64,000 nt of DNA, from positions 12,958,001-13,022,000 of the forward strand of contig OZ287752.1 of NCBI GenBank assembly GCA_965649765.1, given 5' to 3'. Below, piece by piece: positions 3,391-49,024 of the stretch. Position 1 is the first letter of the stretch. Every line of letters begins with the position of its first letter. Both the position numbers and the translations under genes were made by a program. The stretch is from Bispira polyomma. Its lineage: Eukaryota. A model generated the notes under the pieces. The model made no database searches. It saw only the letters and a list, made by a program, of their open reading frames with translations, and was not told where the DNA came from.

Positions 3391-3396
3391 TTGCAG

Positions 3397-5330: not shown

Positions 5331-8300
5331 AAGACAAAATTTGATAGTGAATAGGAAGCAAATGTAATTTGTTCAGGTAAAGAGAGATTTATGTACGGAT
5401 CCACAGAAAAAAAAAATGATTCCACACAGATATTTTGAATAGGCTGTAACTTGTGGCGGCCATCTTGTTTCTGAAATGAGGACAAAGTTCAACAGAAGCA
5501 AGAATTTATAGCGATAAACATAGTTTGAAACTTGAAAGGTGAGGCTACCTGCAAAAGTTTTGAGAGCATTAATGAAGTATAATCTCTCTGCGCCTAACTG
5601 CATCTGAACAAAAGTATCTACCAGATGTCAAAGACATTATGGCTTGGTTTAAATTTTATGAAAAATGTATTGTCAGACACTTGGCCGTTGCAAATTTGGA
5701 GTTAAAAAAGTTCCACAGAAAATTCTATGTGCTTTTACAAATATAGTTTCAACTTACATTTTAAAATCTTTGGCAGTAATGCTCATTCAAAAGTTTAAGC
5801 CACTGCAAATTATCTGTTTCTACATGGTATTGACTTCGGGGTGTGAGGTGGTCTGACTTTGACTAGTGTTGAGTCTCTGTGGGTGGTACAATGATTAGGT
5901 AATTCAAGTACTTTGGTGCCAGTTAATTCTAACATTGGAAAATTACATAATTTCTTTCGAAGTTAATTATTATTTTAAAAACAATTTAGCAGTCAAAAAC
6001 AGAAGCATAAATGACTATGAGCTCAAATGCTGCTCTAATAATGATGCATGAAGTTCCAGGTAGAAGAGTTTGGCTTAATGGCTAAAAATGTTATTTAATA
6101 TCAAGATTTTACAACAAAGTATGGTTATATGTATGGCATATTGTCATCTATGAACAGACTGAGGTCCAACTATTATTTAAGTGCTGTAATATGTTATTAC
6201 AAAAATGTTTCTAGCATCTAAGTATCTAAAGTTATTATCCTTAAGTATATACACAGTTGCTATCATTGTTATATATGTTTCGGTTAAGTTCTGTTCTTCT
6301 GTACAGCTTTAGGTTTCAAGCAGCAATTCGTCAGTTAATAGCTTCATATGTCCCTTGCTGGAATCACAATGTAATACACATTTATAGTATCTGACTAAAA
6401 ATAATATGTTGAGTTAAGTCGATTTTAACAAATCTTTGCACACAAAGTTATAATATTTAGATATAATTATTTGAGGAGTAACCATTATGTGATGGCCATA
6501 CCTTCAAATCAGTATACTCAGCTATTGGTGTTGGTACTTCCGGTTTTGTCATCTCATAGTTGCTGATTCCATGTGTAGATGTTACATTTTCATATGTTGT
6601 TGGACTTTGATTCTAAAAAATATGTTACAATTAAATAACAGCATGTCACAAGAAGAAATGTAAGTAATGTAAATTTAATAGAGAAGATCACACATTGCAC
6701 AAACTCTGTTTTCAAAGATACAAGTGTTTTAAGCATAATGTTATGTTTTTTATGACTTACTGAAGTCCCTTTGGTGGTGTCACTATTGTGGTTTTGTCTC
6801 CTTCTCAACAAAACAATCAGTATAATTAGAGCACCTGTGAGTAAACCAACTATGGTAGACAGAACTGCTATTCCTGCTATTAACTTTACAGATATGCAGA
6901 ATGGGCTGAAAAAAGAACTTCAAAATAAAGGATTACAATTCTTAACAATAATCTTGTTAGATTTCAAATTAATACAAATTATGTACTTTTGTAGTGTAGA
7001 CATTTTCTTATCCCATGTGTCAGATATGTTGTCTTTCACAGGTAAACTTACTTTTGTCAGTTATTGTAAATTGCTGGGCTATTACTTCATCAGTATCCTG
7101 ATATATTTCAAGGTGGTACTCCTCCCTATCATGTACTACATCTACTGCATACATTGTGACACTGGCATCAATAATCTTGTAAATTGAAATGCAATCTTGC
7201 CGTCCATTGTAACACTTTAATAAAGCAGCTCTTGTGTAGTTTCCATCTATCTGTTCCCAGTAAAGGACTACAATATCTACATATATTTTTGCCTCCAATA
7301 TCCCTCTCACTAATGATAGACCTTTGATCAAGTAAAATACAAAAATATGATTCTAAGCTGAATCATGTAATGATCATATATGCATTTAAATGTATTTATT
7401 TGCTTGTATTTAAAGTGTTTGTTTATAACACTTCTTGACTCCACAAGTACAGCCAATCAGTGACTGCCATTCTGCTTAAGACTGCTCAAGACAGAGGATT
7501 AACAATTTATTATGCTGCAATATGACAGTCTTTAAAGTGGTACATCTGAGCCACTATTTATGTGCCTGTGCCTCAGAGCCCAAGGCCCTGGTCAAATTTT
7601 TATCATCCGTGGACCTAAGCAAGTGGGATACACACTATGCCACAGTGGCAAATTTTTCATGATATTATTTTCTTTAACTTGACAACGCCATTTGCTTTGG
7701 ACCAATTGGTGTCTATGGCATATACATATATACTACCATACAGCATATTAAGAATATAAACAATATGGAGAATGTATCCTTGTTTAGAGGCTCTTTGGAT
7801 AATAATATGCCTTGCTTTAATAATAATAGTGACATAACTAAATAGCTGCTGGTACCTAAAGTTGTTACTGATATCTCTGACTGGTAATCACTTTCTCCAT
7901 ATTGGTTTTGAGCTTGAACCCTAAAGAAGTACTCTGTATCAGGTAATAAATTTGACACTTTGTACATAGTTCTCTTGCTATGTTCATTTGTCTGAATCCC
8001 ATCATAATACAGTATTTTAGTGTCCCCTTGATGCCGGTAATATACTGTAAATGTTTGTGTTACTGGACTCCTGCCAGGGATCCATGACATAGTCACTGAT
8101 ATGGCAGTTATGGATTCAAATATAAAGGAATATGGTGGCTCAGGAACACCTGAAACACAAAAAGTAGGAAATATTTACCAATAGACATAAAAATATTACC
8201 AGTAGGTAATAAAGTAGTGAGAGATTAAGACATCTGAAAATCTGTGCTGTTCTGTTGTCATGGATAAATAATATACTGGTAATTACTGGCAGAGAGGGGA

Positions 8301-11300
8301 ATATCTATGTTAGATGCCATACAAAATATGCCCAGCAAATAATATTTGTATCAAATATAAACTTCATCTGACAGTGATATATATTCTTGATATAAATACC
8401 ACATACTTACTGTTTCTAAAGTAATTCAACTGCATATCAGTCGCTTGGAAAATGCAGTAGGACTAACAATTATGTTGCAATTCCAACCAGGTGGAAATGA
8501 CAAACAAATGTCCAAGATGACAACTATGAATATTAACTATTACAAATAGTCCTTCAACCAGGGGCTTAAACTGTGGACCAGTTGAACAAAGAAAGTTTCT
8601 TGGTAGCATCTTGGGTTTTTTTAATTCCCTGACTCTGTTTTTCTAGATGAAATCACAATACCTTTCCAGGATGCAAACAGAATAGATATTTTATGAATTC
8701 TAAATTAATCCAATTTAAAATTGGAGCATTGTAAATAATACCTCTTTCTAGTAACTCAAGTGAAAAACTAACAGGCTGTTGAATACCATTAGTCACAGTA
8801 ACTGTGTACTCTGTGTAGTCTTCTATTTGCACAGTATTTATCACAAGTTCAGAAATAAATACTTCATCACTCATTTTTCTCGAATTTACACCATCAGTGA
8901 TACTTGATCCACCCACTTTGCTCCAGATAAAAGCTGCTTCAAGGTCACTAAACTCAGGAAAAGCTCTCACTGTGACAATAAGGGTGACTTGTTGATTTAG
9001 TCCTGCATAGAAAACCACAGTATCTCTGCTGAGAAAAATTGGTGGATCTGAAGGTACAGTGATATAAATTTAGTACAGCAAATATAAAACACATAGTTGG
9101 ACATAGTAGACCAATCAATTCCAAGTAATTTCTACAGTGCATCTATACAGTTACTTACAATGTATAACAACCTGTATTCCTGCTGTGTCACTCCCCACTG
9201 TATTCCCTGCTGTGCATCTATAAGTCGCTGCATCAGTGTACACTGCCTTCTCTATTATCAGCTCTGTGTTCTCTCTCTGATCTGGTAGAGCCTGAGATGT
9301 GGTATCTTCATATTTAGGTTCAAACTCCCATAATTGGCTTGTGATTTCCTCAGGGTTACCAACCTTAATGTTACAGCGAATAGCAAGTTCTGACCCTTCT
9401 TCTGTGGTGATTGACGCAGTTTGAGCTGCTATGTCTGGAGGATCTGATTGAAAAGAACATTACAATAAACATTTAATGTAATACAAAATATGGTAATAAA
9501 ACATGAAATGATCAGAGTATAATTTTTGTAAATATTTTTTCTGCCATTTAACGGCAGAAACATTTTCAGATTACATCTAATGACCGGCAATGCTTATAGT
9601 ATAAGGCAAAGTTTTCCAATATAATGTGTCTTGTTTCATCTAAAACAAAAATCTAGATTGTACAACTAATAATTATTCATAATAAACAGTATTGCAGAAA
9701 TGTTATATGTTTAACATCACCCTAAATTCAACAGTTTTACTTTTTCTTCAGTAACTGTTTCAAGATACATCCTGGCTAATATACTTTTGATATTAAAGTG
9801 GGTTCAAAATTTTCTATGGGATGTGGTAAAAATGTGGTGTTAATAACATTACTATTAAGAACCTCAACATAATGTAGATGACAGGTAACATGTAGTTAGT
9901 GACTTTTTATTCCTAAAAGTAGAACATGAGAATAGGTTTACATGTCTTTTAATTCCAAAATATGTAATTATTCTATCACTATATAATTATAATAGATGAA
10001 ACTTACACAATACACTAATTTTCAGGCTTTCAGACATTAAATGTCCACCCTGAGAGCATATTATTGTCATCAACTCTGCAGTAAAACTGGTCTCCATCGT
10101 CATCCTTGTCAACAATGAGCTCATACTCCAGTGTCTTGGCTATCACCACTGCTAGATGTACAGTTGTTCCAAGTCTGAACAACTTTAATCTACCGGCATG
10201 ATTACTGTCTACTTCACAAGTCAAGGTCAACAGAGTATTCTCATTTACTGTTGAGGATGGAGAGGCTGTAGGTTTACTCACTGATGATGGTACATCTGGA
10301 ATTTGAATAGTAGTTTACTGAATAAGGCACAATATTACCCTGAAACCTATTATAAGCCTACTAATTGATATCAACATTTGGTATAGCAAACTTCAAGTGC
10401 AAAGGTATGATTTAAGTCTTCATGAGCATTCAATGTGTATTAGTTGTTCTGATTAGAGAACCATCAAGAGATGATAATATAAACAAAAGTTTATTGTAAA
10501 TGAGAAACTCCAGCTATTCCACCAACCAAGTCAAGGTCCATTATTTCGTCGATAGTGTGCACACTCTCATTAAAGTCACCCTTAAGTGACTTCAGTTCAC
10601 AAAAACACCCACTACTCTAGTTTGTGTTGTAGGCTGGGGGGCTATTGTGGTCTCTGTTATATATTAGACAACAGTTGACCAAATTGATAAAACATTAACA
10701 ACAGAATCTGTGGGCATTTAGTATTCTCGTATTTATCTTTATCTAGCATTGAAACCACTAGTTATTTTATTTTACTTCTGAACACTATCATTTATCCTCC
10801 ATTTACCATTTTTAAATTCCAAATTCTAGTCATGGAGCGATATAAGTGTAGTCATATCATGTACTTTTTATCATGGAATAGGAAAGGATTACCAGTCAAA
10901 TTAATATGCCAAGTCAGGCTGATGCTTAAAAAGTTGTATTCTACAAACCAGAATATGACCACTAGTATAAAACTACTTGGGACAAGTTCAAACCATATAC
11001 GGTGTCATAAAAAGATACAGCATCTCAGAAGAATGACATAAGTCAGGGGGACTTTTAAATCCATATGCATACCACCTGCCTGTGATAACATCCATGCAGC
11101 TAGGTATTGTGAACTGATAACTGAGGCCTTAGGCCCTAATAGTTTTTCCCACCCCAGAAATGTACCTACAGTCTCGAGAAATGTGGTTATTTGAGATAAA
11201 ATATTGGAGATTAATTAACTATGTGCTATGTGTCATATTAAAACAAGTACTATTTTCGGACAGAACTTAGAACTTGTAACAACCTTATACAATCACATTA

Positions 11301-12677
11301 TGACATCATATTTCCTGGTGTCAATATTCACCCATATACGCCATTTAAAGTTGCAATACTATTTATTAATTTGGCATTACCTGCTTCCTCGTTTTTATTT
11401 TGTTAGTTCATATTTGCAGGATATAGAATTTTGAGACATTTACACTGCTTTGTTGTTTATTGTCCTTGCTGTTTTAAATGTAATTTGTTATTAAGTTTTG
11501 AGTACATATGATTTTAAAACTGATTCTAGCGAGTCTATAGTTCATATATGCAACCATTTTGAAACATTTTATGTAAAGCACTACCTTGTTATTTAGTAGC
11601 TCTACATAGTCTTCATGAATATCATATTTTCATGATTTATCATGGTTATTAGACTCTTGTCTAACACACCACCAAGTGACATATTAGTTTGTGATGACAC
11701 TTACAAACACAATGTTCAAAGAATGAGTCCTCTCCTCACACAGGAAAGTTTTGTAAAACAACTTCATGACATACTACACATCCAGAGTTTCAGTGTTTGA
11801 TGTCTTCACTACTTTTATTGGTCCTTCACCCCAGGTTAATTCACACTGTACTCCTTGACCTTGCTGACCACGATTAAAGATCAGTGTATGTGTATAAGTC
11901 ACTGTATAGGTCAGTCCATTACTCTCGTTACTCTCTGTCTCAACACCTCCACTGTAGTGCATTACCTATGGTACTAAGGCTCACAGAATCCGGGGCATCT
12001 GGAAGTTTAGGAAAAATAAATATGTTAACTATTATACAATATGTTTTATCAAACAGATGTAATGATTGATAACTGTATTTAAATGATAACATGCTTTAGC
12101 AAATGATAAATTAAGTGTTTATATTTTGTTTAACTTTCAAAAAATTATTTTTATTAAGAAATCATGTTGGCTTAGATTTGGTATTTAGAAATATAGGCAC
12201 AATTGTAAGTTAACTTGGTTTAAAAACTTGGTTTAAATACTAAATAAAAAAGATATCTTCCTTTATATGATTATTTATGTACATACTCCAGGGGTTATAC
12301 TTTGGGTCCCACTTAAATTCCAAATATTTTATTAGTGACAATTAAGCTGTCTACTTAAAATTCATCACAACATATATAATGTTTGATAGTACTATTTTTA
12401 AAGAAGATTAGTTATAATAGTAATTTCTTGCAAAATTTCTTGTAAAATTCTATGAATTTTATAAAATGTACAAATTGCGATAAAAATGTGTTTCCTTAGA
12501 TTTTATTAAGTTGTAAACAGGTCATATTCCTATGCCTTGTTGATATTTCCAGTCTATGGTTTGCTACTGCAAATATATGAGGAAATATATGTCCCTTAAG
12601 GTAGAATACACACAGGAATTTGGATTGGTATTTAACACTTTTTTCATGTATATTGATTAACAAACAAAAACACTCAC

Positions 12678-13079
12678 CATATACTTTGTTATTTAAGTCC
12701 AGGTATTTATTTCCGTAATCCCCAGGCTGGTTTTCAGCAAAACATCTGTATCTAATGGCATCAGTGAGGATGTTCACCTCGGATATAGTCAGTCTGTGTG
12801 ACGTGTCTGTGTAAGTCCAAGTCACATCTCTGTCTTCTAAAGTTCCTCCTACCAGTTCGTTACCAGGTGCAACTGCTTTAGAGAAAAGGTACACTTCATT
12901 GTTTGTCTGACTGTTGTACCAACTAACATCATACAATTCAGCTTCACTGAGTCCATATTCACACACTAGAGTAACACTCTTACCATTCAGCAAATAGTAT
13001 GTAGACCCATCTCTGTAGTCCGATTCATAGTGAGTTGTCACATTGATTTTACTCAATATGACAGACAGTAGCGACAAAA
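12678..13079 (-). CDS. Copy A exon 2: open V-set Ig domain (class I)
   Basis: ttgcag acceptor, G|GTGAGT donor, 402 nt, phase 1-1. Motifs VTLVC...VSWY...HRLTISEVNILTDAIRYRC. Confidence 0.7.
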
Positions 13080-13586
13080 CTGCAAACATGAGTTTCAAAT
13101 ATTTAAGGCAGATATAAATTTATCCTGAACTGAGCCAATTAAAATGTGTTGTAACAGTAAATATGTTCCTGGAATGTCCATTTTTTGTTTAAATTCTGTT
13201 GAATTTGAAATGTGTCTTGCAATATTCTATCGTTTGTGAACTGTCCGTGTTTTGGTGGAAAGTGCATATCTTTTTAATGTTTACATATTTACGTTTGTTA
13301 AAAACCACACAATTTTCAATGCTAGGAAGTGTGGCTGTTATTAAGTGTGTGAATGGTTTACACAATTATTAGATACATGTACATACTTTATTAAAACTGA
13401 AAACTTGGATAATAAATTAGCATCTGTAAAAATATCAAAAATGATTAATTTTAAAAATTGTGTTTATGTAAATGTAAATAGGTTTCCTTTTGTATAACAA
13501 ATGGAGTTAGATTAATAAAAGTTAAATGAATAAACCATCATCAAAGTAAATCTAAAAAATGCACTAAAACATAAAATTGTACTTAC

Positions 13587-13620
13587 TTAATGAAATTATG
13601 TACTGATAATTTCCACACAT
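13587..13620 (-). CDS. Copy A exon 1: signal peptide start
   Basis: ATG TGT GGA AAT TAT CAG TAC ATA ATT TCA TTA A|GTAAGT splices in frame to give MCGNYQYIISLILSLLSVILS-KINV. Confidence 0.65.
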
Positions 13621-17192: not shown

Positions 17193-20100
17193 TCAGTTGA
17201 TGGTTTCATATGTCACTTGCTGCAATGACAATGTATTACATATTGAAAGTAATAAGAATAACAAGTTGAGTTAAAAACGATTTTAACAAATTTTAGCACA
17301 GTAGGTTATGCTATTTGGATGCAATTATTTGAGGAGTATCAATGATGTGATGGCCATACCTTCAAATCTGTATACTCAGCTGGTGGTGTATGTTCCTCTG
17401 GTTTTGTCATCTCATAGTTGCTGATTCCATGTGTCGGTGTTACATTTTCATATGTTGTATGGACTTTGATTCTTGAAAATATGTCAAAATTAAATAACAT
17501 GCCACAAGATGAAATGTAGGTCATATAAACTTACTAAAGAAAAGAACACACATTGCATATGGCACAAACTATGTTTTCAGTGATGCAAGTATGTCAAACA
17601 TCATGTTATGCTTTTAAAACTTACTGAAGACCCTTTGGTGGTGTCACCAGTTTGGTTCTCTCTCCTTCTGAACAAAACAATCAGTGTAATTAGGGCCATT
17701 GTAAGAAAACCAACCACGGTAGACAGAACAGCTATTCCTACAATTAGTCCGGTGTCTTTCTTTACATAAAGATCTGCTGAATGGGCTGAAAAAGAACCTT
17801 AAAATAAAGGCTTACAATTCTAAACAATAATCTTGTTAGGTGTCAAATTAATACAAATTATGTACTTTTGTAGTGTAGACATTTTCTTATCCCATGGGTC
17901 AGATATATTGTCTTTCACAGGTAAGCTTACTTTTGTCAATTATTGTAAATTGCTGGGCTATTACTTCATCAGTATCCTGATATATTATAAGGTAGTATTC
18001 CTCCCCATCATATACTACGTCTACTGCATACATTGTGACATTGGCATCAGTAATCTTGTAAATTGAAATGCAATCTTGTCGTTCATTGTAACACTTTAAT
18101 AAAGCAGCTCTTGTGTAGTTTCCATCTATCTGTTCCCAGTAAAGGACCACAATATCTTCATATATTTTTGCCTCCAATATCCCTCTCACTAATGGTAGAC
18201 CTTTGATCAAGTAAAATACAAAAATATGATTCTAAACTGAATCATGTAATGGTCATATATGCATTTAAATGTATTTATTTGCTTGTATTTAAAGTGTTTG
18301 TTTATAACACTTCTTGACTCCACAAGTACAGCAAATCAGTGACTGCCATTCTGCTTAAGACTGCTCAAGACAGAGGATTAGTAATTTATTATGCTGCAAT
18401 ATGACAGTCTTTCAAGTGATATATCTGAGCCACTTTTTTGTGCCTGTGCCTCAGAGCCCAAGGACCCTGATCAAACTTCTGTCATCCGTGTACCTAAGCA
18501 AGTGGGATATACACTTTGCCACAGTGGCAAATTTATACACGATACTATTTTATCTAACTTGACAACCCCATTTGCTTTGGACTAATTGGTGTCTATGGCA
18601 TATACATATATATTATATCTCTGGCTGATGATCACTTTCTCCATATTGGTTTTGAACTTGAACTCTAAAGAAGTACTCTGTATCAGGTAATAAATTTGAC
18701 ACTTTGTACATAGTTCTCTTGCTATGTTCACTGGTCTGAATCCCATCATAATACAATATTTTAGTGTCCCCTTGATGCCTGTACTATACTGTAAATGTTT
18801 GTGTTACTGGACTCCTGCCAGGGATCCATGACATAGTCACTGATATGGCAGTTATGGATTCAAATATAAAGGAATATGGTGGTTCAGGAACACCTGAAAC
18901 ACCAAAAGTAGGAAATATTTACCAATAGACATAAAAATATTACCAGTAGGTAATAAAGTAGTGAGAGATTAAGACATCTGAAAATCTGTGCTGTTCTGTT
19001 GTCATGGATAAATAATATACTGGTAATTACTGGCAGAGAGGGGAATATCTATGTTAGATGCCATACAAAATATGCCCAGCAAATAATATTTGTATCAAAT
19101 ATAAACTTCATCTGACAGTGATATATATTCTTGATATAAATACCACATACTTACTGTTTCTAAAGTAATTCAACTGCATATCAGTCGCTTGGAAAATGCA
19201 GTAGGACTAACAATTATGTTGCAATTCCAACCAGGTGGAAATGACAAACAAATGTCCAAGATGACAACTATGAATATTAACTATTACAAATAGTCCTTCA
19301 ACCAGGGGCTTAAACTGTGGACCAGTTGAACAAAGAAAGTTTCTTGGTAGCATCTTGGGTTTTTTTAATTCCCTGACTCTGTTTTTCTAGATGAAATCAC
19401 AATACCTTTCCAGGATGCAAACAGAATAGATATTTTATGAATTCTAAATTAATCCAATTTAAAATTGGAGCATTGTAAATAATACCTCTTTCTAGTAACT
19501 CAAGTGAAAAACTAACAGGCTGTTGAATACCATTAGTCACAGTAACTGTGTACTCTGTGTAGTCTTCTATTTGCACAGTATTTATCACAAGTTCAGAAAT
19601 AAATACTTCATCACTCATTTTTCTCGAATTTACACCATCAGTGATACTTGATCCACCCACTTTGCTCCAGATAAAAGCTGCTTCAAGGTCACTAAACTCA
19701 GGAAAAGCTCTCAGTGTGACAATAAGGGTGACTTGTTGATTTAGTCCTGCATAGAAAACCACAGTATCTCTGCTGAGAAAAATTGGTGGATCTGAAGGTA
19801 CAGTGATATAAATTTAGTACAGCAAATAAAAAACACATAGTTGGACATAGTAGACCAATCAATTCCAAGTAATTTCTACAGTGCATCTATACAGTTACTT
19901 ACAATGTATAACAACCTGTATTCCTGCTGTGTCACTCCCCACTGTATTCCCTGCTGTGCATCTATAAGTCGCTGCATCAGTGTACACTGCCTTCTCTATT
20001 ATCAGCTCTGTGTTCTCTCTCTGATCTGGTAGAGCCTGAGATGTGGCATCTTCTAATTTAGGTTCAAACTCCCATAATTGGCTTGTGATTTCCTCAGGGT

Positions 20101-23100
20101 TACCAACCTTAATGTTACAGCTAATAACAAGTTCTGACCCTTCTTCTATGGTGATTGACGCAGTTTGAGCTGCTATGTCTGGAGGATCTGATTAAAACAG
20201 AGAAAAGAACATTACAATAAACATTTAATGTAATACAAAATATGGTAATAAGACATGAAATGATCAGGGTATAATTTTTGTAAATATTTTTTCTGCCATT
20301 TAACGGCAGAAACATTTTCAGATTACATCTAATGACCGGCAATGCTTATAGTATAAGGCAAAGTTTTCCAATATAATGTGTCTTGTGTCATCCAAAACAA
20401 AAATCTAGATTGTACAACTAATAATTATTCATAATAAACAGTATTGCAGAAATGTTATATGTTTAACATCACCCTAAATTCAACAGTTTTACTTTTTCTT
20501 CAGTAACTGTTTCAAGATACATCCTGGCTAATATACTTTTGATATTAAAGTGGGTTCAAAATTTTCTATGGGATGTGGTAAAAATGTGGTGTTAATAACA
20601 TTACTATTTAGAACCTCAACATAATGTAAATGACAGGTAACATGTAGTTAGTGACTTTTTATTCCTAAAAGTAGAACATGAGAATAGGTTTGCATCTCTT
20701 TTAATTCCAAAATATGTAATTATTCTATCACTATATAATTATAATAGATGAAACTTACACAATACACTAATTCCCAGGCTTTCAGACTCCACATTAAATG
20801 TCCACCCTGAGTGCATATTATTGTCATCAACTCTGCAGTAAAACTGGTCTCCATCATCATCCTTGTCAACAATGAGCTCATACTCCAGTGTCTTGGCTAT
20901 CACCACTGCTAGACATACAGTTGTTCCAAGTCTGAACAACTTTAATCTACCGGCAGGATTACTGTCTACTTCATAAGTCAAGGTCAACAGAGTATTCTCA
21001 TTTACTGTTGAGGATGGAGAGGCTGTAGGTTGACTCACTGATGATGGTAAATCTAGAATTGAATAGTACTTAACTGAATAAGGCCCAATATTATCCTAAA
21101 AACCATTATGAACCTATTAATTGATATCAACATTTGGTATAGCAAACTTCAAGTGCAAAGGTATGATTGAAGCCTTTATGAGCATTCAATGTGTATTAGT
21201 TGTTCTGATTAGAGAAACATCAAGAGATAGTAATATAAACAAAATTTTATTGTAAATGAGAAACTCCAGCTACTCCGCAAACCAAGTCAAGGTCTGTTAT
21301 TTCGTCTATAGTGTGCACACTCTCATTAAAGTCACCCTTAAGTGACTTCAGTTGACAAAAACACCCGATACTCTAGTTTGTAAGGTAGCCGTGAGGGGGC
21401 TAGTGTGGTCTGTGTTATATATTAGAAAACAGTTGACCAAATTGATAAAACATTAACGGCAGAATCTGTTGGACATTTAGTATTTTTGAATTTATCCTTA
21501 TCTGCCATTCAAAACACTAGTTATTTTTCTGAACACTAAATGAACACTGATGCTAAAACAATTGTATGTAATAGAAACCAGAATAATACCACTATAAGAA
21601 AACTATTTGGAATAAGTTCATACCATATACAGTGTGATAAAAAGATACACCATCTCAGAAGAATGACTTGAGTCTGGGGGACTTTTAAAGATATAGTTAT
21701 GTATACCATCTGCCTGGCTTTTGGATGTGATAACATTCATCCAGCTAGGTATTGTAAACTGATATATAAGAAAAATGCCTGAGGCCCTGAGGCCTTAGAT
21801 CCTAATGAATTTGCCCACCCCAGAAATGTACCTACAGTCTCAAGCAATGTTGATATTTGAGATAAAATATTGGAGATTGATTAACTGTGTACTATGTGTC
21901 ATATTAAAACAAATACTATTCTCGGACAGAACTTAGAATTTTTAACAACCAATATAGATAGCCTTATACAAGCACATGACATCATATTACCAGGGTGTGA
22001 ATATTTACCTACATACACCATTTAAAATTGCAATGCCATTTATTAGTTAAGCATCACCTACTTTCTCGTTATTATTTTGTTGGTTCATATTTGTGAGAAA
22101 GCCTTGATTTAAAAGCTGCATGAAAACAGACATTAAATAGAATTTTGAGACATTTACACTGCCTTCTTGTTTGAAAACAATTTTGAAACATTTTATGTAA
22201 AGCACTACCTTGTGATTTGGTAGCTTTACATAGTCTACATGAATATCATATTTTCATCTTTTGTCATAGGTATTAGATTAATATTTAACAAACCACCAAG
22301 TGACATATTAGTTTATGATGACACACTAATAAAAATGTTGAAAGAATTAGCTCTCTCTTCACACGAGAAAGCTATGCAAAACAACTTTATGACAGATTTA
22401 CAGTACACATCCAGGGTTTTAGTGTTTGATGTTTTCACAACTTCTATTGGTCCCTCACCCCAGGTCAGTTCACATTGTACTCCTTGACCTTGTTGACCAC
22501 GGTTAAAGATCACTGTCTGTGTATAAGTCACTGTATAGGTCAGTCCATTACGCTCCTCACTCTCTGTCTCAAGACCTCCACTGTAGTACTCACTCCCTAC
22601 TTTTACTCTGAAGTCTGTCTCCTCTTTACCTGGATAGATGGAAGACACTCTACACTGGATAGATTTGGCTACACCCTCAATTACATTACCTATGGTGGTA
22701 ACGCTTACAGAATCAGGGGCAACTGGAAGTAAATATGTTAAACATTATACAATATGTTTATTAAACAGATGTAATGATAGATAACTGCATGTAAATAATA
22801 ACATGCTTTAGCAAATGATAAATTAAGTGTTTATATTTTGTTTAACTCTGACATAATTAATTATATCAAGAATTTATAAGCTATGATATTTAGTGGTAGT
22901 ATATTTTAGATGCGATATTATGTATAGGTTACTTTGATGAACATACCTTAATGTACTTGAAAATTATAATTTCCAATTATACTGTGTGCAAATATTACTC
23001 TGATAATACCACCTTGAAATTCAAATACTCAAAGTGTGTAAGAATTACAATTTCTAATTATATTGTGTGCAAATGTTACTCTGATAATATCACCTTCATA

Positions 23101-23703
23101 TGCAAATACTCTTATATAAGTCTTATACCTTAAAGCCCACTGAAATTTCATATATCTTATTGATGACAATTAAGCTACTTAAAATTTATTACAACATACC
23201 TAATGTTTTTATAGTACTATCTTTCAAACGATTAGTTAAGAGCAGTAATTTTTCAAGTTTTTCGACAATTTTTATTTGATTGAATGTCTTTCTTTAGACT
23301 TTATAAAGTTGTAAACAGGTCATGTTTTGTTGACTGTCTTCTGGACAAGTGTACATTTTTTTATTATATGCTCATGTGTGTTAAGAACTACAGATTTCAC
23401 ACATTTTTTTATATTAGGAATTGTGGCTATTATCAAGTTTGTAGATGATACCCACAATTATTAGGTACATATTTAATTAAAGTGAATGCTAGTGTGATAC
23501 ATTAGCATCTGTATAACTCTAAAAGATGAATAATTTTAAATATTTTGTTCATGTAATTTTTAATATGTCCCCGTTTGTATAATAAATGAAGTTGGATAAA
23601 TACAAGTTAAGCGAATAGATCCAAAAATATTTAATTAAATCTACAACTTTACTAAAAATATTTACTTACATATTGAAATTATGTACTAATAATTTCCACA
23701 CAT
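17193..23703 (-). pseudogene. IgSF receptor copy B (class-I leader, V exon deleted)
   Basis: Leader exon reads MCGNY* (TAG). The V exon is missing through a ~700-bp deletion near 23325 relative to copy A. The FN3 exon donor is deleted near 18615 and the first Cys of Ig3 is changed to Tyr. Other exons are recognisable. Confidence 0.85.
22955..23111. repeat. Imperfect tandem duplication (~80-bp period) in a copy B intron
   Basis: aattataatttccaattatactgtgtgcaaatattactctgataataccacctt...caaatactc occurs twice with few differences. Confidence 0.7.
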
Positions 23704-23755: not shown

Positions 23756-23966
23756 TGTGCACAACACGACTACTCTAGGGGTCTGTTAGTTCAGTCCAAC
23801 ATAAGATTTATCCAACCTTAAAAATTTTAGGTTACACATAACCTTTATTTTCCTGTTTATGTGATAACCTCCAATCAAATTCAAGTTTAGTCACCCATGA
23901 CCGCTCCCCTCCATTTTATTAGCATTATTAACTCGAGATTTGAACGAGCAACACAGACATTTTGAA
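23756..23966 (+). repeat. Left terminal direct repeat of element 2
   Basis: 211 bp, 3 mismatches to 29191-29401 (manual count). Confidence 0.95.
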
Positions 23967-24068
23967 AACTGGAATGTATATAGTATTTTTTATTTATTTT
24001 ATTTTAGTTTGTTTTTAGTTTTATACATCCAGTCATTATTTATGTATAGTGTGATCCATAAGAAGAAA

Positions 24069-25410
24069 ATGGGCAAAACAACGGAGAAAACGCCAGTTAA
24101 AAGGGCAGACAAAGCTAGGACAAAGAAGAGTACGGTAATTTTCACAGACCTCAGCAAAGGTCAGCAGGTATCAGACTTTATAGTTTCCGAGGTTCAAGCT
24201 CAGTTAACTGCCTTAGCGGCTAGACCTCTCGAACCGTCTCCAGAATTCTTATCCACAACTACTACCAACTCCAGGGCCGCTTATGGTCAGGTCACACCTC
24301 CACGTGCACCTAATAACATCACCACCGAGTCTTTACTGCCACATACTCTGGGCTACTCGACTGCAGACAGAGACCTTGCTTTTCATGGCGAGTCAACAGC
24401 CCATGTCGAGCGTTACTGCTAGTACAGACAGCTCATCAGAGATGCTGGCTATACTTAGACGACTGGAAACTTCGAACGCAGAACTCAGTCAGCAAATCAG
24501 TAAGGTTCAAACGACTCAGATCCAACAAGCGTTACTTACTAGGCCGGCTGCAGATATCACAGGAGCACACCACTCCACGTCAGCAGCTTCAGCGTCAATA
24601 GCTCCACCTCCGTTATGTCACATATGGGCGATGAATCCAGGTCCAACTGCATTACCCTCAGGTCATCAGGACTTTGCTAAGGACGACATGGTTCAACAAC
24701 TGGACACTCTTTGGGCGATACCAGCCATACAGGCGGCCATAGCCAGGCGGTTAGCGGGGTATGAGACCAATATCCAGAGAGACATTCTTCAAGGTAAGGC
24801 TCCAGTAAAACAGAAATCTGGGCGTTATAACAGTTCTGACATTTACACAACAAACCCCAAATTTCGATGGCCGAATGAGGGGTGGGTAGGCGCTAACGCG
24901 AAACGGAAACCGACTTTTGACGACTTGTCTTTGGTGCAATGGGCGGCTGGGCAGCTCAACAATGCTCTTCTAGTAGCAGACCCTGTCTTGATGAAAGGTA
25001 TGATCCAGCAAGTAGTTCACACACTCAGGGACGCGGCAGCTCTCCCCTGGCCAGTGGTTCGCACGGCCTGGGGCCACAGTATGCAGGAAATAGAAGAAGG
25101 GCGACTTACATGGGACAACCAAACGCAGTGGGCTTTAAATAGATTAAGTGCATCTCAAATGGCACTAGTAAGCAATACTGGTAACAATGGTAGCAATGAT
25201 CTGAGTAAGGGGAAACAAAATGAATTTAAGACGATCTGTAAGTTGTACAACAATGGGAAATGTTCTCACAAAACCGACCATGCTAACTACAGGCATATTT
25301 GTTGGCATTGTTCGAAAACATTTGGCAAGGATGCAGTGCACCCTGAGTTCAAATGCTTTAAATTTCAGGCCAATCTGAACAAGAACCCAGAACAGTCAAA
25401 TAATCATTAG
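24069..25410 (+). pseudogene. gag: Element 2 gag-like ORF (one frameshift near 24390)
   Basis: ATG at 24069 (MGKTTEK...) joins ORF 24283-25410. C-terminal Cys/His cluster CKLYNNGKC..H..YRHICWHC....H....C as in DIRS/Ngaro gag. Confidence 0.8.
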
Positions 25411-26144
25411 GGACAATAGCGTCAGCCAATCAGCGAATCGGAAGTGTATAGTATTAAGCAGGAAAGTTGTATAACTTGTGTCACCAGTAAGGAAGGTAAA
25501 GAAGTCAGTAGTAAAATAAATAATCATGATTTTAATGCCAAGACTAATTCTAACATTGCCAATAATGTTCGCATGCAGGTAGTGAAGAACACACCAAGGG
25601 AGCATTATGATACTGTGAATGATTTAAAAAATAGTAGAAAGGTTCTTGACGCTTTAACAAGTAATTGTTTACAGGAAAATTTTGAGGATACTAATCCTAC
25701 TTTATCAGTCAAGTCCTATGGTAAAGATACTGGTTGTACTACCGGTGAAACTATTCAAGTGCATATATCTGTTACAAATTTATCTGAAATTTCTAGTTAT
25801 GGGGGAGTCATGGCCCCAGTGGTTTATATTCAGAGTGAAAATAAGAACTTTAGCAAGGGCTTCTATTGCCTTTGCCACTGTGCTACATACAATTGTATGG
25901 TATATTCTCCAATATTAGTTGTTAATTCAACAGGTGAACTGCAGATTATAGATCTGCTAATTATTCTTATGATATCAGGAAACAAGCAAAAAATTGTTAC
26001 TATTACCATAAAAAAGATCTGCAGTCCTCTGTTCAACATAATTATAACTATACTTCTTATATAGAAAATGTAATTGATGTCTTAATTAAGCAATCACAGG
26101 CAGCAGATGTCTGTCATGTCAGAGATAGTCAAAATGTAAATAAA

Positions 26145-28011
26145 ATGATTGTTAATAAAAGCAAGCAGGTAAAGGTGAGTAGGGACGACTTACCGTATTC
26201 ACATACGCATCCGTCTGTCTTCCTCGAAAACTGTCATAGCACAAATATCCAGGTAGACAGAAATACTACCAGTTCTGGTAACACTGACATTAATAATCCA
26301 GACAAAACTACAGGTTTTATGGCACTTTCTTCTACAAAATTTGAATTTATAGGTCCTGACAGGAAACCTGTCAACATTGATTCAGTAGAAAAAATGATTG
26401 AAACCGGCAAGCTGGTTAGTGACACTGAGTTTCCTAACTACAAAAAAGCCAGGTATCCAATCATTTCAGGTTTGAACCCAAGTGCTTTGGAAAACATTTT
26501 TTCTGATTATCCTGACCAGCTGGTAATCCAGTATGTTAAATTTAGGCTTACTAATCCTGATAGCTTAAACAACATAAAAATAAAAAAAACTCTTCTCTGC
26601 TTTACAATACACTAAGGCTGTAGGGCAATATCTAGACAAAGAGAAAGACAATGAAGCTATGTTGGGCCCAGTCAAAGCCATTCACTCTACACAATTACAT
26701 TGTTCTCCATTATTAACCCGTCTGAAAGACGTTGACAAAAGGTGAGTAATTTTGCATCTCTCTTATCCCCAGGGCGATTCTCTGAATGACAATGTTAACA
26801 AAGTACAGTTTGACGGGGTAGAATTTAAATTAAAATTTCCAACCATAGATGATATTACACAGGCAATTCGTTGCACTCAGGAACCGACTTTGTTTAAAAT
26901 CGACATTTCGCGCGCATTTCGTAACCTTAGAGTCGATCCGGCTGAGGTCATAAAGTTGGGCATATCTTGGAACGACGAGTTGTATCTGGATCCGGCGTCC
27001 TGGATCCATTCGGGTGGGTTCATGGGAGCGGGGCGTTTCAGCGATGCTCAGACGCAGTAGCATTTTACATGAATAAGTCAGGTTTTAATTTACTTTGCTA
27101 CATCGATGACTACATATGTATTACACCTAAACATAAGACTAAGGAAGGCTTTGAAATTTTGACAGATTTACTATGTAAATTAGGTCTTCCCATGAACAGC
27201 GAGAAACTCACTCCACCCACACAGACTATGACATGTCTGGGCAAAAATATTGATATACAGAAGGGCACAATTTCTATCACCAAGGAAAAAATTACCCAAA
27301 TTGGAATCTATGTTTGGAAATTTATAATAAAAAATTCATTTCAAAAAACAAGGTAGTCTGCTGTACATACACAAATGTGTGAAGCCAGTGCGTACTTTCA
27401 TAAATAGACTACTAATAGCATTTAGAGGCAATACTGACAAGCGCATTGAGGTCAATGCGGACATGAAAAGTGATTTATAATGGTTTCTGAAATTTTTTCC
27501 TTCCTACAACGGAGTCACATATATTAACCCCACCATAGTTTCAGACGATAACAAACTACATCTGGACGTTTGCCTCATAGGTTTTGGAGGTGTTTGGGGT
27601 GACCAGGTATATGCAACTCCAATACATAATGTTTACAACCGAGACTTAAATATTGCACATCTCGAGATGTTAAATATTATAATAGCTATTAGAATCTGGG
27701 CGAATGACTGGGCCCACAGCAAATTAAACATTCATTGTGATAACATGGCTGTAGTATTGGTTGTCAGATCCCAAAAGACTAAAGATGACTTCTTAGCATT
27801 CTGTTTAAGGAACTTATGGCTAATAGCAGCAGTACATGGTATAACACTTACTATAGAACATATTCCTGGGAAATAAAATATTACAGCAGACGCTTTATCT
27901 AGAGTATACTCAGCTAACCCACCTTGTGTGGAAATGATGGAGGCATTAAACAAGAATTTTCAATGGAAACTAGTTCCATTGGAATACTTTAACCTTAATT
28001 TATCTGTGTAA
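26145..28011 (+). pseudogene. pol: Element 2 RT/RNase H (pol), disrupted
   Basis: FKIDISRAFRNL, FGWVHGS, CYIDDY, LHLDVCLIGFGG, HLEMLN, HCDNMAVV, HIPGK*NITADALSR, with several stops and frameshifts. Ends at TAA 28009-28011. Confidence 0.88.
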
Positions 28012-28017
28012 TTGCAG

Positions 28018-28994
28018 GCTCTACCAACCTCAGCAGCCAATTTGTAGCCTCAGCCTGGAACAGAATTGACACTGCCATCAGACCAAAGACAGCTAGTGCT
28101 TATAAGTCACAATTTAGTACCTTTCTGGCATTTAATTATTTTGTTGGCATTTATCAAGTAACTGTACATTCAGTACTGGTATTTCTAGAGTATCTGGTTC
28201 AAGCGGGGTTATCACCCAGGGCTATAAATAACTATGTAGCTGCCATTAAATACATGATACAAAAATAGCAACTAGACCCTACACCATTATCACACAAATA
28301 CATTCAATTATTCTTGAGAAACTTGAAACATAATTCAGTTTTCAAGCCAAAACACAAAGGCATTTTCGACATACAACAACTGGCTAGTGTTTCCAAGGCT
28401 TGCAATATCCTGGAAGATCCATTATTGTTCAGGGCTATATTCCTCATGGCATTTTTTGCATTTTTGAGACTGTTAAACATAGCAGCACATTCAAAATCGG
28501 CCTTTGACCCTACCAGACATTTCCTCAGGCAAGACCTATTATTTAGACCACCTGGGGCACATATAACACTTAAGTGGGCGAAAAACCTACAGAACAGATC
28601 TGACACAGACATAATACAAATTCCTGAACTTCACAATACTATATTGTGCCGTGTATTAGCTTTAAGGAAATTGCTTGCTTCCAGGAATCTTTCACACAAA
28701 GCACCATTATTTGCAATGGCTACCCCACCTTTCTACCCTGTGGTGGATTCTCACGTGAGGGCAGCTCTCCAAAATTTTTTAGAACACATTGGCATTGAAT
28801 ACAAATCACATGGCTTCCATACTTTTAGAAGATCTGGAGCCACATACGCATTCAACAATAATGTTTCATTACAGAACATAATGTCACATGGCTTATGGAG
28901 GTCTTCAGCTGTGTGAACCTACTTGCAACAGACATCAGAAGCAGCTTCTGTTGTCCCTCTCACTTTCGCTTCCACCATTCCTCCTTCCTCTTAG
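28018..28994 (+). pseudogene. Element 2 tyrosine recombinase (two in-frame stops)
   Basis: AIRPKTASAY, FFAFLRLLNI, HGFHTFRRSGAT, HGLWRSSAV*TY. No ATG at the N-terminus; preceded by an AG acceptor. Confidence 0.88.
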
Positions 28995-29190
28995 TTGGGC
29001 TTGGGTGTCAAAAAATTTCAAAATAATTTTAAAATTTTTATTACTTTACATCTTATCTGTACATGTACATATATACTAACGTGTAAAAAATAAAATCCTC
29101 AAACAGAGTTTCATTGACTTATAAACTTATTCCAACAAACTTCTTTGGGAATCATCTTAACTTATTGCTTTCACATCTTAGAACTTGGAC

Positions 29191-29401
29191 TGTGCACAAC
29201 ACGACTACTCTAGGGGTCTGTTAGTTCAGTCCAACATAGGATTTATCCAACCTTAAAAATTTTAGGTTACACATAACCTTTATTTTCCTGTTTATGTGAT
29301 AACCTCCAATCAAATTCAAGTTTAGTCACCCATAACCGCTCCCCTCCATTTTGTTAGCATTATTAACTCGAGATTTGAACGAGCAACACAGACATTTTGA
29401 A
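29191..29401 (+). repeat. Right terminal direct repeat of element 2
   Basis: Matches 23756-23966. Confidence 0.95.
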
Positions 29402-30126
29402 CTCTAAATACTTCCGGTATAAAACTCTTTACATTAAAGTCTATGCGTACTTCTAATACCACAAATACTTCCTTGAGTTCATTATATACAGGAAGATTAT
29501 TGCGAGACGCGTGTAATGTGATCATTCTGTTCCAAATACGGTATATGTACAGTGTCTGTATATAAACAGGCTGGTATAAGTCCGATTTTATTATGCTACA
29601 GACTTCAAAGAAATATACGTTTCAATACTATAAAAAGCTGTTCATTAAAATTGTTAATATTGTGATTTTATACAGTTTCAATAGAAAATGTTATGGCAGT
29701 GTATACATGGGGAGACTTTGTGAGAGACAAGAAAATTAAACAGATATTTCAAAATCAAAAGTTTGTAAAGTCAGTCATACTAAACAAGAGCCAAAACATT
29801 TGGGGTTTTTTATTATCCATCAGTTTGTTTATACAAAAGTGAACAATTATGTCTGAGAAAATATATTAAGCGAAAAAAAAAATTGACATGTAATATATCC
29901 AAACTTTGAGTTAAGCAATATAATTACATTTATAAATGGCTAATTAAGCTTATTTAGGATAGGATAGACAAAATATATTTACATAATTTATAAATAATTA
30001 CCTAAATAAGATGATTATGTGAAAAAGAACACAAAACAAACCCAGATCAAGTGATTTCTTGCTTTGTGAATACCGATTTTATTTTAGGGAACACTTGAGA
30101 GTTTGTTCTCAAATTTTATCTGATCT

Positions 30127-47700: not shown

Positions 47701-49024
47701 TGACATCATATTTACAGGTGTCAATATACACCCATATACACCATTTAAAGCTGCAACACTATTTATTAATTAAGCAATACTTGCTTCCTCGTTATTATTT
47801 TGTTAGATCATATTTCCAGGATAGGTTTTAAAAGCCCCATGAAAAGGACATTATAAACATTTTATGTAAAGCACTACTTTGTGATTTGGTAGCTCTACAT
47901 AGTTTTCATATCATATTTTCATGTTTTATCATGGTTATTAGCTTCATGTCTAACACACCACTAAGTGACATATTAGTTTGTTGATGACACACTAATAAAC
48001 ACAATTCTTAAAGAGTGAGCTCTCGCCTCACACAGGAGAGCTATGAAAAACCACTTCATGGCATACTTACAGTACACATCTAGGGTTTCAGTGTTTGATG
48101 TTTTCAATACTTCGATTTGTCCAACACCCCAAGTTAGTTCACACTGTACTCCTTGACCATGCTGACCACGGTTAAAGCTCAGTGTCTGTATATAAGTCAC
48201 TGTATAAGCTAGTACATTACTCTCCTCACTCTCTGTCTCAACACCTCCACTGTGGTACTCACTTCCTACTTGTATTCTGAAGTCTGCCTTCATTTTACCT
48301 GGATAGATGGAGGACACTCTACAGTGGATAATTTGGGTTGCACCCTCAATTACCACTACCTATGATAGTGAGGCTCACAGAATCGTAATTGTAATGTATA
48401 AAAATAAAAATCATAATATTTTATTTGATGTGACATTGTGGATTAATAAAAGCAATGTTAATATAAATTTTGACGTATATACTATTATACTGCTTCATAA
48501 AACATATTTTTATAGAATAAGAATAGTTTAAAGTAGAGCTACTGTACCCCATATTTTCCCAGTCAAATCCAACGCATTATTTCCTTCATATAGGTCTGGA
48601 GTCTGTATATAACAATGATACTGTAAACCATCGGTCAGTATGTTCACATCATTTACGGTCAGCCTGTGTTCTGTACCTTTGAACTCGTACTCTACATCTC
48701 TCCCAATGAACTTATTCACCAATTGACTCCTGTTCTGTGGTCCATAGTAAGTAAACACACGATGTGAAGTAGCTTGACTATACCAGTCAAGTGTTCTTAT
48801 GTCACTTTTAGGTAAACCAGAATCACAAACTAGGGTCTTTGAGTCTCCGTGTAAGATGTAGAAAGTAGAGCCAGAACTGCAAGGACTTTCATAGTGAGTA
48901 CTCACTGATACTTCTGCATATACTACTGACCTCTCTGAAATGACAAGTTTATGTAGAGTTATTAAGCATATTTGCTAGCTTCACTGAATACACATGTGTG
49001 TACATGTATACGTTGAGTAATATT

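What the first reader, a model, noticed from the sequence alone, without database searches (positions are those of the whole stretch)
12000..13620. Two highly divergent promoter+leader+V modules grafted onto near-identical constant regions
Seen: the V domains of copies A and C share only about 44 of ~120 residues (~37%, manual count). They have different leaders (MCGNYQYIISL vs MVVQCLFWLTLFI), different intron 1/2 sizes (~510/~680 vs ~210/~200 bp) and non-alignable upstream DNA. Exons 4-10 are mostly ~85-95% identical at the protein level, and similarity switches within intron 2 close to the exon 3 acceptor. Inference: recombination in phase-1 intron 2 swaps recognition module and promoter while the stalk and signalling tail are homogenised, a germline V-shuffling mechanism.
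Basis: partly seen in the sequence, partly recalled or inferred. Interest (0 to 1): 0.8.

Follow-up and report, generated by a model that had tools for sequence, protein, structure and literature searches.

The report
Two old V modules, shared receptor body
A tandem cluster of invertebrate immunoglobulin-type receptor genes carries two very old, very different front ends on a rear part that ordinary recombination between copies keeps similar, and four of the five copies here, including both carrying the first front-end type, are broken genes.

Summary
Copies A and C share 38% of V-domain residues. Their leaders, intron sizes (507/679 vs 210/203 nt) and upstream DNA differ, yet from 5 nt before exon 3 onward they are about 90% identical, introns included.

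Two V classes exist genome-wide: V1 at 8 sites and V2 at about 18, including fragments. No third class was found on this constant region. Synonymous difference is saturated between classes in V (0.71) but only 0.20 in exon 3.

A second species has both classes. Its exons 3 and 4 group by species (support 100/100), while V groups by class. So the constant exons evolve in concert and the front module escapes.

Inside the window the nearest relative switches at least three times along the constant region, with stretches that are 100% identical. A and B join a V1 front to a V2-lineage body. E is the reverse. All junctions lie in or at exon 3.

This is unequal crossing-over and gene conversion, as in KIR, chicken BG and CEACAM genes. 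It is not a dedicated V-shuffling device. A, B, D and E are pseudogenes; only C reads intact. No RNA data exist. The scan had not noted this pattern on other DNA.

The parts
13587..13620 (-). Copy A exon 1. Class 1 leader MCGNYQYIISL, phase 1 donor.
   Evidence: Sequence read. The same leader type occurs at class 1 genes at 17.29, 17.47 and 13.029 Mb.
12678..13079 (-). Copy A exon 2. Class 1 V-set Ig domain (V1), open frame.
   Evidence: It is 69-80% identical to seven other V1 exons in the genome and 35-38% identical to V2.
11999..12677 (-). Copy A intron 2 (679 nt), class 1 type right up to the acceptor.
   Evidence: Alignment. A and B group with the 17.x, 19.x and 13.029 class 1 genes. Quartet sites upstream of exon 3 split AB|CD 42:0:0.
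11775..11998 (-). Copy A exon 3 remnant. It carries a 95-nt frame-shifting deletion at 11958/11959 and has lost its donor. The junction between the class 1 front and the alpha-type (V2-lineage) body lies within it.
   Evidence: Contigs from independent runs span it with 0 differences.
6496..11774 (-). Copy A intron 3 to exon 10. About 90% identical to C including introns. Exon 4 has a 5-nt deletion; exon 9 has 4-nt and 12-nt deletions.
17354..23703 (-). Copy B. It has a class 1 front (exon 1 at 23703 carries an in-frame stop) and its V exon is deleted. Exons 3-10 are alpha type. The exon 7 3' end is damaged and exon 10 has a +1 frameshift.
23758..29405 (+). Retroelement inserted about 60 nt upstream of copy B's start codon. 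It has gag-like, RT and tyrosine-recombinase-like ORFs.
   Evidence: The A-B alignment breaks at A 13675/13680. ORFs listed.
40356..40395 (-). Copy C exon 1. Class 2 leader MVVQCLFWLTLFI.
   Evidence: The class 2 consensus leader MMVQWLF.L.LFS occurs at 10 other loci.
39759..40145 (-). Copy C exon 2. Class 2 V-set Ig domain (V2).
   Evidence: AF2 model with pLDDT 89.8. Foldseek top hits are antibody, VHH and MOG V domains.
33687..39555 (-). Copy C exons 3-10: four Ig domains, FN3, an FN3-like domain, TM and a tyrosine-motif tail. All frames are open and all splice sites are AG/GT.
42544..54155 (-). Copy D. Class 2 front with exon 1 at 54155 and V at 48934-48548, and a 5-kb insertion holding a non-LTR retrotransposon in intron 1. 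Exon 3 acceptor lost, exon 4 5-nt deletion, exon 6 stop, exon 7 duplicated.
57025..61157 (-). Copy E. Decayed class 2 V and class 2 intron 2. Its intron 3 is the beta type otherwise seen only in class 1 genes at 17.29 and 17.47 Mb. Many frameshifts. 98-100% identical to D over intron 6 and exon 7.

Best explanation
The window holds five tandem copies (A to E) of a type I membrane receptor gene of the immunoglobulin superfamily. Its layout is V-set Ig, four Ig domains, FN3, an FN3-like domain, a transmembrane segment and a tail with tyrosine motifs. The array runs from 12.96 to 13.17 Mb of the chromosome.

The family has two old versions of the front module (promoter, leader exon, intron 1, V exon, intron 2). 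Both descend from one ancestral V exon, since motifs are shared along the whole domain. They split before this species separated from a second one.

The rest of the gene is kept similar within each species by exchange between copies. There are two layers. Inside the array, long conversion or crossover tracts include introns. Between dispersed copies, similarity is confined to exons. Inferred: exchange cannot run into the front module because homology ends at the exon 3 acceptor. That is why every class 1 vs class 2 comparison switches there.

Recombination in or at exon 3, the first homologous stretch, has at least twice joined a front of one lineage to a body of the other. A and B are V1 plus a V2-lineage body. 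E is V2 plus a V1-lineage body.

Shown: the mosaic structure, the age contrast, concerted evolution in two species, and the decay of A, B, D and E.
Inferred: the molecular route (unequal crossing-over plus gene conversion) and an immune-type recognition role.
For: Two classes genome-wide:
- V1 occurs at 8 sites and V2 at about 18 sites including fragments. Each class has its own leader and intron sizes.

Age contrast:
- V pS is 0.71 between classes (0.75 for A vs C), against 0.35 within V1 and 0.17 within V2.
- Exon 3 pS is 0.20 between class-1-linked and class-2-linked genes, the same as within each class.
- A vs C over exons 3-10 gives pS 0.13.
- The exon 3 tree is a star without class structure.

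Second species (ENA assembly ERZ22147071):
- It has V1-like and V2-like genes.
- V groups by class with 100/100 support.
- Its exons 3 and 4 are 89% identical to each other but 70-77% identical to ours, and group by species with 100/100 support.
- pS over exons 3+4 is 0.20 within that species against 0.44-0.48 between species.

Patchwork inside the window:
- Quartet-informative sites run AB|CD, then AD|BC, then AB|CD, then AD|BC. There are 39 runs against 90 expected (p<1e-4).
- A equals B at 100% over about 600 nt including intron 6. D and E are 98-100% identical over intron 6 and exon 7. B and C are 95-97% identical at the 3' end.

Hybrids:
- A and B have class 1 intron 2 but the alpha intron 3 of V2-lineage genes.
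- E has class 2 intron 2 but the beta intron 3 of the 17.x V1 genes.

Divergence does not track V class:
- C's constant region is 91-94% identical to A and B. It is only 75-88% identical to its class 2 neighbours, and 70-89% identical to dispersed V1 genes.
Against: - For dispersed genes I hold sequence only for exon 3 and its flanks.
- The second species contributes one gene per class and only exons 3-4.
- Its V2-like V exon (P0001) sits on a long branch, so it could be a third class.
- The AU test does not quite reject a clade of class-1-linked exon 3 (p=0.052).
- Exon-limited similarity between dispersed copies could owe something to selection.
- No RNA evidence exists for any copy.
Confidence: 0.8

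Rival explanations
1. A selected, recurrent germline mechanism recombines within phase 1 intron 2 to move recognition modules and their promoters between receptor bodies, generating recognition diversity.
For: All exons from 2 to 8 are phase 1, so module swaps keep the frame. At least two independent front/body re-assortments exist, A/B and E. The same two-module arrangement occurs in a second species.
Against: Intron 2 shares no homology between classes, so it cannot host homologous exchange. Junctions map to exon 3. Only two V classes sit on this constant region. The hybrids seen here (A, B, E) are all pseudogenes. No recombination signal or special sequence was seen at the boundary. The same patchwork occurs throughout the constant region, where it has no bearing on V choice.
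Confidence: 0.1
2. No exchange at all. The genes are simple old duplicates in which V evolved fast under diversifying selection while the constant part was held by purifying selection.
For: pN/pS in V2 exons is high, 0.139/0.167. Between dispersed copies similarity is limited to exons.
Against: Synonymous sites and introns show the same contrast: pS is 0.75 in V against 0.13 in constant exons, and introns are 90% identical between A and C. Constant exons group by species while V groups by class. The phylogenetic signal along the gene is blocky.
Confidence: 0.04
3. Assembly artefact. Tandem copies were collapsed or mis-joined, creating false chimeras.
For: Tandem arrays of 85-100% identical units are hard to assemble. 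One short-read contig joins 12228 to 12784.
Against: Contigs of three runs from two samples match the A junction stretches exactly. A and B carry the same combination independently, with 10-20% divergence in their front parts. The class boundary is the same at dispersed loci and in another species' assembly.
Confidence: 0.03
4. The V modules are alternative first-exon cassettes spliced to shared constant exons, as in protocadherin or UGT1A clusters.
For: Each module has its own promoter and leader. A stray V2 fragment without a body lies just beyond the window's end, at 13.022 Mb.
Against: Every full V module is followed within 0.2-5 kb by its own exon 3 and constant exons.
Confidence: 0.03

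Closest known systems
Chicken BG (butyrophilin-like) tandem gene family (Salomonsen et al. 2014, PMC4046983)
   Same: A tandem IgSF family with a V-type domain, two kinds of promoter/5' end, and many hybrid genes formed by recombination or deletion. The array expands and contracts (abstract read).
   Different: In BG the two 5' types differ mainly in promoter and 5'UTR and go with tissue expression. Here the V domain itself is dimorphic at 38% identity, and expression is unknown.
KIR hybrid genes by non-allelic homologous recombination (Traherne et al. 2010, PMC2816608)
   Same: Head-to-tail Ig receptor genes in which unequal crossing-over makes genes with the front of one locus and the rear of another. 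I took this from the paper's title and abstract as listed, and from general knowledge.
   Different: KIR introns are alignable throughout, so junctions can lie in introns. Here homology between classes starts only at exon 3. Haplotype variation was not examined here.
CEACAM, Siglec-11/16 and CD300A/C concerted evolution (PMC7042247, PMC8860441, PMC5701461, PMC12447643)
   Same: Interlocus gene conversion homogenises part of an IgSF receptor gene while another part escapes (titles and abstracts).
   Different: In those families the ligand-binding N domain is usually the converted part and the tail differs. Here the body and tail are homogenised and the V module escapes.
Hydractinia Alr allorecognition gene family (PMC9546547)
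   Same: An invertebrate tandem family of receptors with V-set-like domains and tyrosine-motif tails (abstract). The language-model neighbours of the V2 exon are unnamed cnidarian Ig clusters.
   Different: No sequence homology was tested or shown. Domain number and FN3 content differ. Resemblance is at the level of kind only.

Membership tests
V-set immunoglobulin domain | Nine-strand Ig sandwich with C' and C'' strands | tested here: met
   The AF2 model of C exon 2 has mean pLDDT 89.8 and nine strands. The best Foldseek PDB hits are all VHH, antibody V and MOG V domains, with E about 1e-7 and TM 0.6-0.68.
V-set immunoglobulin domain | Cys(B)-Cys(F) about 70 residues apart, Trp in strand C, D-x-x-x-Y-x-C before strand F | tested here: met
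   Invariant C36, W50, D101, Y105 and C107 in the alignment of 20 V1 and V2 exons.
V-set immunoglobulin domain | Score above Pfam PF07686 gathering threshold | tested here: not met
   A's V exon scores 16.4 bits against a cut-off of 26. C's V exon has only a weak Ig_3 hit. It is too diverged for the profile; the fold evidence stands.
Multigene family under concerted evolution | Paralogues within a species are more alike than orthologues between species | tested here: met
   Exons 3 and 4 group by species with 100/100 support. pS is 0.20 within species against 0.44-0.48 between. V groups by class.
Multigene family under concerted evolution | Blocky, switching phylogenetic signal along aligned paralogues, with identical tracts that include non-coding DNA | tested here: met
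   There are 39 runs against 90 expected (p<1e-4). A and B are 100% identical, and D and E 98-100% identical, over tracts that include intron 6.
Hybrid genes by unequal crossing-over (KIR/BG kind) | Front of one lineage and rear of another joined at a single point | tested here: met
   A and B have class 1 intron 2 with alpha intron 3. E has class 2 intron 2 with beta intron 3.
Hybrid genes by unequal crossing-over (KIR/BG kind) | Copy-number or hybrid polymorphism among haplotypes | not tested
   Only contigs of two samples were laid on 3.8 kb of copy A.
Variable-exon cassette cluster (protocadherin/UGT1A kind) | Many variable first exons share one downstream set of constant exons | tested here: not met
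   Each V module has its own exon 3-10 directly downstream.
Inhibitory ITIM/ITSM immune receptors | Cytoplasmic TxYxx(V/I) and (I/V/L/S)xYxx(L/V) motifs after a TM segment | tested here: inconclusive
   C exon 10 reads TTYENV, which fits the ITSM pattern. It also reads AEYTDL, which is YxxL but with A at -2. Signalling cannot be tested here.

The most novel reading that the evidence does not exclude
The array, mostly pseudogenes, is a standing reservoir. Templated conversion and exon 3 crossovers repeatedly re-assort two trans-species recognition modules, each with its own promoter, onto a species-specific signalling body. The exon-limited homogenisation seen between copies megabases apart, on other chromosomes and in a second species reflects an unusual conversion route that is targeted to exons or templated from spliced RNA, rather than ordinary DNA-level exchange.
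Probability: 0.08. Interest if true: 0.75.

Novelty: new member of a known kind. Interest (0 to 1): 0.4.

Why it matters
It gives a clean invertebrate example of a rule known from vertebrate immune receptor clusters: part of a tandem Ig receptor gene evolves in concert while another part escapes. Here the escaping part is a whole promoter+leader+V module that has been kept in two forms since before a species split. That points to two long-maintained recognition specificities or expression programmes on one signalling body.

It also warns annotators. Most copies in the array, including the striking chimeras, are dead genes. Protein-level similarity hides this.

Tried and rejected
Per-exon trees of exons 4-10 for dispersed genes could therefore not be built. 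I used identity tables from two DNA searches instead.
- The word-index protein search with the V2 exon found nothing, because its length window excludes full-length proteins.
- The exhaustive search gave only 23 hits. The frog titin-like, FcR-like and hemicentin-like hits match 30-40 residues of generic Ig and were set aside.
- No run on record as RNA holds the locus, so splicing, expression and exon 3 skipping in A could not be tested.
- The exon 3 tree is too star-like to place the A/B junction inside the exon.
- Literature searches found no description of this family.
Every search was made exon by exon, by reference.
- I first assumed a bivalve. I have no evidence for the phylum.

Full report
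**What is there**

The window (chromosome piece C5, 12,958,001-13,022,000 of a 1.04-Gb, 75-contig invertebrate assembly) holds five head-to-tail copies of one gene on the minus strand. Their spans are:
- A: 6496-13620
- B: 17354-23703
- C: 33687-40395
- D: 42544-54155
- E: 57025-61157

Copy C gives a clean ten-exon model. Every acceptor is AG and every donor is GT. Exons 2-8 are each a multiple of three in length and are flanked by phase 1 introns. The exons encode:
- a leader
- a V-type Ig domain
- four further Ig domains
- an FN3 domain
- an FN3-like domain with no Pfam hit
- a transmembrane segment
- a short tail carrying TTYENV and AEYTDL

The V exon folds with confidence. AlphaFold2 gives a mean pLDDT of 89.8 and nine strands. 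Its best structural matches are antibody, nanobody and MOG V domains. It does not reach Pfam's V-set threshold.

I never joined exons into a spliced protein. All searches and the fold were run exon by exon, by reference.

**Check of the observation**

| Feature | Copy A | Copy C |
|---|---|---|
| Leader | MCGNYQYIISL | MVVQCLFWLTLFI |
| Intron 1 | 507 nt | 210 nt |
| Intron 2 | 679 nt | 203 nt |

- The V domains share 38% of residues.
- BLASTN finds no similarity between A and C upstream of exon 3. From 5 nt before the exon 3 acceptor onward they align, introns included, with 4.2 kb at 90.7%.
- With C's frame imposed, A's exons 4-10 are 79-96% identical in protein.

- Exon 3 has a 95-nt deletion that shifts the frame and removes the first cysteine.
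- The exon 3 donor is gone.
- Exon 4 lacks 5 nt.
- Exon 9 lacks 4 nt and 12 nt.

The other copies:
- **B:** stop codon in exon 1, no V exon, a retroelement about 60 nt upstream of the start codon, a damaged exon 7 end and a +1 shift in exon 10.
- **D:** lost exon 3 acceptor, frameshifts, and a 5-kb insertion (holding a retrotransposon) in intron 1.
- **E:** riddled with indels.
- **C:** the only copy that reads intact.

Short-read contigs from three DNA runs (two samples, one study) match A's intron 2/exon 3 stretch, including the deletion, with no differences. They also match its exon 3/intron 3 stretch with no differences. The chimera is therefore not an assembly error.

**Two classes, genome-wide**

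Six-frame searches of the whole assembly found both kinds of V exon at many sites.
- **V1 (like A), 8 sites:** C5 at 12.97, 13.03, 17.29, 17.47, 19.39, 19.50 and 19.73 Mb, and C11 at 48.17 Mb.
- **V2 (like C), about 18 sites including fragments:** most lie in the 12.96-13.17 Mb array. Others are at 11.41, 16.93, 19.03 and 70.67 Mb and on C6.

Each class keeps its own features across these dispersed loci.

| Feature | V1 | V2 |
|---|---|---|
| Leader | MCG.YQY... | MMVQWLF.L.LFS |
| Intron 1 length | about 500-620 nt | about 200-215 nt |

The two classes align along the whole domain with shared motifs such as THYES, TLVC, RDV, HRLT, VNILTD and Y.C. They are therefore old versions of one ancestral V exon, not unrelated domains.

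No third class sits on this constant region. Every exon 3 of the family that the DNA search found is preceded by a V1 or a V2 exon, or in B by a V1 front whose V exon is deleted. More distant V-like exons (26-31% identity) come with equally distant exon 3 (39-46%).

**Age contrast**

| Comparison | pS |
|---|---|
| V exons, between classes | 0.71 |
| V exons, A vs C | 0.75 (saturated) |
| V exons, within V1 | 0.35 |
| V exons, within V2 | 0.17 |
| Exon 3, class-1-linked vs class-2-linked genes | 0.20 |
| Exon 3, within class-1-linked / within class-2-linked | 0.21 / 0.17 |
| Exons 3-10, A vs C | 0.13 |

The exon 3 tree is a star with no class structure. A forced class 1 clade costs 5.3 log-likelihood units (AU p=0.052).

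**Second species**

The exhaustive protein search with the V2 exon returned few relatives. The informative ones come from a single other assembly, ENA ERZ22147071:
- P0003, P0004 and P0016 are V1-like, about 57-63% identical to A.
- P0001 is V2-like, 47-48% identical to V2 and 36-38% identical to V1.

In a V tree the V1|V2 split has 100/100 support with members of that species on both sides. P0001 is on a long branch.

The DNA around one gene of each kind (L054, L055) contains exons 3 and 4.
- Those exons are 88.7% and 89.0% identical between the two genes of that species.
- They are only 70-77% identical to any copy in this genome.
- Both exon trees group by species with 100/100 support.
- pS over exons 3+4 is 0.20 within that species and 0.44-0.48 between species.

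This is the classic signature of concerted evolution. The constant exons have been homogenised within each species after the split. The front modules have not.

In that species, as here, homology between the two genes is confined to the exons plus about 10 nt of splice signal.

**Exchange inside the array**

I aligned the constant regions of A to E and looked at which copy is nearest along the gene.
- In the middle of intron 3, A is closest to D (92%).
- From exon 4 to exon 7, A and B are 96-100% identical, with 100% over about 600 nt that includes intron 6.
- D and E are 98-100% identical over intron 6 and exon 7.
- From exon 8 to the 3' flank, B goes with C (95-97%) and A is at 85%.

Quartet-informative sites form long blocks:
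- AB|CD upstream of exon 3 (42:0:0)
- AD|BC in the middle of intron 3 (19 of 26 sites)
- AB|CD from the end of intron 3 to exon 7
- AD|BC from intron 7 onward (76 of 84 sites)

Within the constant region there are 39 runs against 90 expected by permutation, p<1e-4. Long conversion or crossover tracts that include introns are therefore active in the array.

**Hybrids**

The start of intron 3 comes in three types.

| Intron 3 type | Genes carrying it |
|---|---|
| alpha | C, D, the V2 genes at 13.081, 13.097 and 13.172 Mb, C6 14.48 Mb, and weakly 70.67 Mb; also A and B |
| beta | V1 genes at 17.29 and 17.47 Mb; also E |
| gamma | V1 genes at 19.50, 19.73 and 13.029 Mb |

A and B have class 1 intron 2 joined to an alpha, V2-lineage body. 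E has class 2 intron 2 joined to a beta, V1-lineage body. The junctions lie in or at exon 3, and the events are at least two and independent.

In line with this, C's constant region is 91-94% identical to A and B. It is only 75-88% identical to its class 2 neighbours, and 70-89% identical to the dispersed V1 genes.

**Mechanism**

The most likely account has four parts:
1. An old duplication gave two front modules. They diverged until no homology was left in the promoter, intron 1, intron 2 or the synonymous sites of V.
2. Unequal crossing-over and gene conversion keep mixing the homologous remainder.
3. These events cannot extend past the exon 3 acceptor because homology ends there. That is why every cross-class comparison switches at that point.
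4. Crossovers in exon 3 make hybrid genes.

Parts 1 and 2 rest on the data above. Parts 3 and 4 are inferences from the junction positions.

This is the behaviour described for KIR hybrids (PMC2816608), for chicken BG genes with two promoter types and many hybrids (PMC4046983), and for CEACAM and Siglec families.

It is not a dedicated V-shuffling device, for these reasons:
- Intron 2 cannot be the site of homologous exchange.
- Only two modules exist.
- The hybrids in view are pseudogenes.

**Open points**

- Similarity is confined to exons between dispersed copies and in the second species. Exon 3 is notably more alike (88-92%) than exons 4-6 (81-82%) between C and the 17.x genes. Short conversion tracts limited by homology are the simplest reading, but I did not test it.
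- Expression and function are unknown, because no run on record as RNA holds the locus.
- The organism is unidentified. I saw many matches to exons 7-10 at 17.0-17.55 Mb that lack V1 or V2 exons.

**Verdict**

This is a new example of a known evolutionary process. The notable feature is a trans-species dimorphic promoter+leader+V module.

Noticed in passing
window 23758-29405: A retroelement of about 5.6 kb with gag-like, reverse-transcriptase and tyrosine-recombinase-like ORFs (DIRS/Ngaro kind). It is inserted about 60 nt upstream of copy B's start codon. A related element lies at 1591-4517.
   Followed up: partly
window 14388-15420 and 30119-31700: Arrays of a 28-nt satellite sit at the same relative place upstream of copies A and B. 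The flanks A 13680-14399 and B 29405-30102 are 88.8% identical, so the satellite is part of the duplicated unit.
   Followed up: no
window 49302-52599: A non-LTR retrotransposon (RT and endonuclease-like ORFs, minus strand) lies within a 5-kb insertion (49024-53981) in intron 1 of copy D. The insertion separates D's leader exon (54155) from its V exon (48934).
   Followed up: partly
window 37703-37959: A SINE-like repeat of about 255 nt in intron 3 of copy C. It is 96% identical to copies on at least nine chromosomes and is absent from A and B, so it is a recent insertion.
   Followed up: no
window 43663-43943 and 44386-44832: Copy D carries two copies of the FN3 exon (exon 7) about 830 nt apart.
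   Followed up: no
window 12228 to 12784: One short-read contig in each of three DNA runs joins 12228 to 12784, skipping 555 nt that include the 3' end of A's V exon. Only 30 letters lie on the shorter side. It may be a repeat-induced join or a deletion allele.
   Followed up: no
G000 C5 17.0-17.55 Mb (outside the window): About 20 places match exons 7-10 of the family at 72-86%, but no V1, V2 or exon 3 match was found beside most of them. The membrane-proximal part and the tail may be shared with a wider family that has other front ends.
   Followed up: no
window 33687-33797 (copy C exon 10): The tail holds three tyrosines: TTYENV (ITSM pattern), SNYEM and AEYTDL. The exon may either end at a stop after VWPSHH or splice on from AAG|GTATGG.
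   Followed up: no
L054 10355-16005 and L055 11235-16211: In the second species, intron 2 of the V2-like gene is 5.6 kb and its intron 3 is 355 nt. In the V1 gene, intron 2 is about 400 nt and intron 3 is 5.0 kb. Intron sizes are not conserved between species.
   Followed up: no
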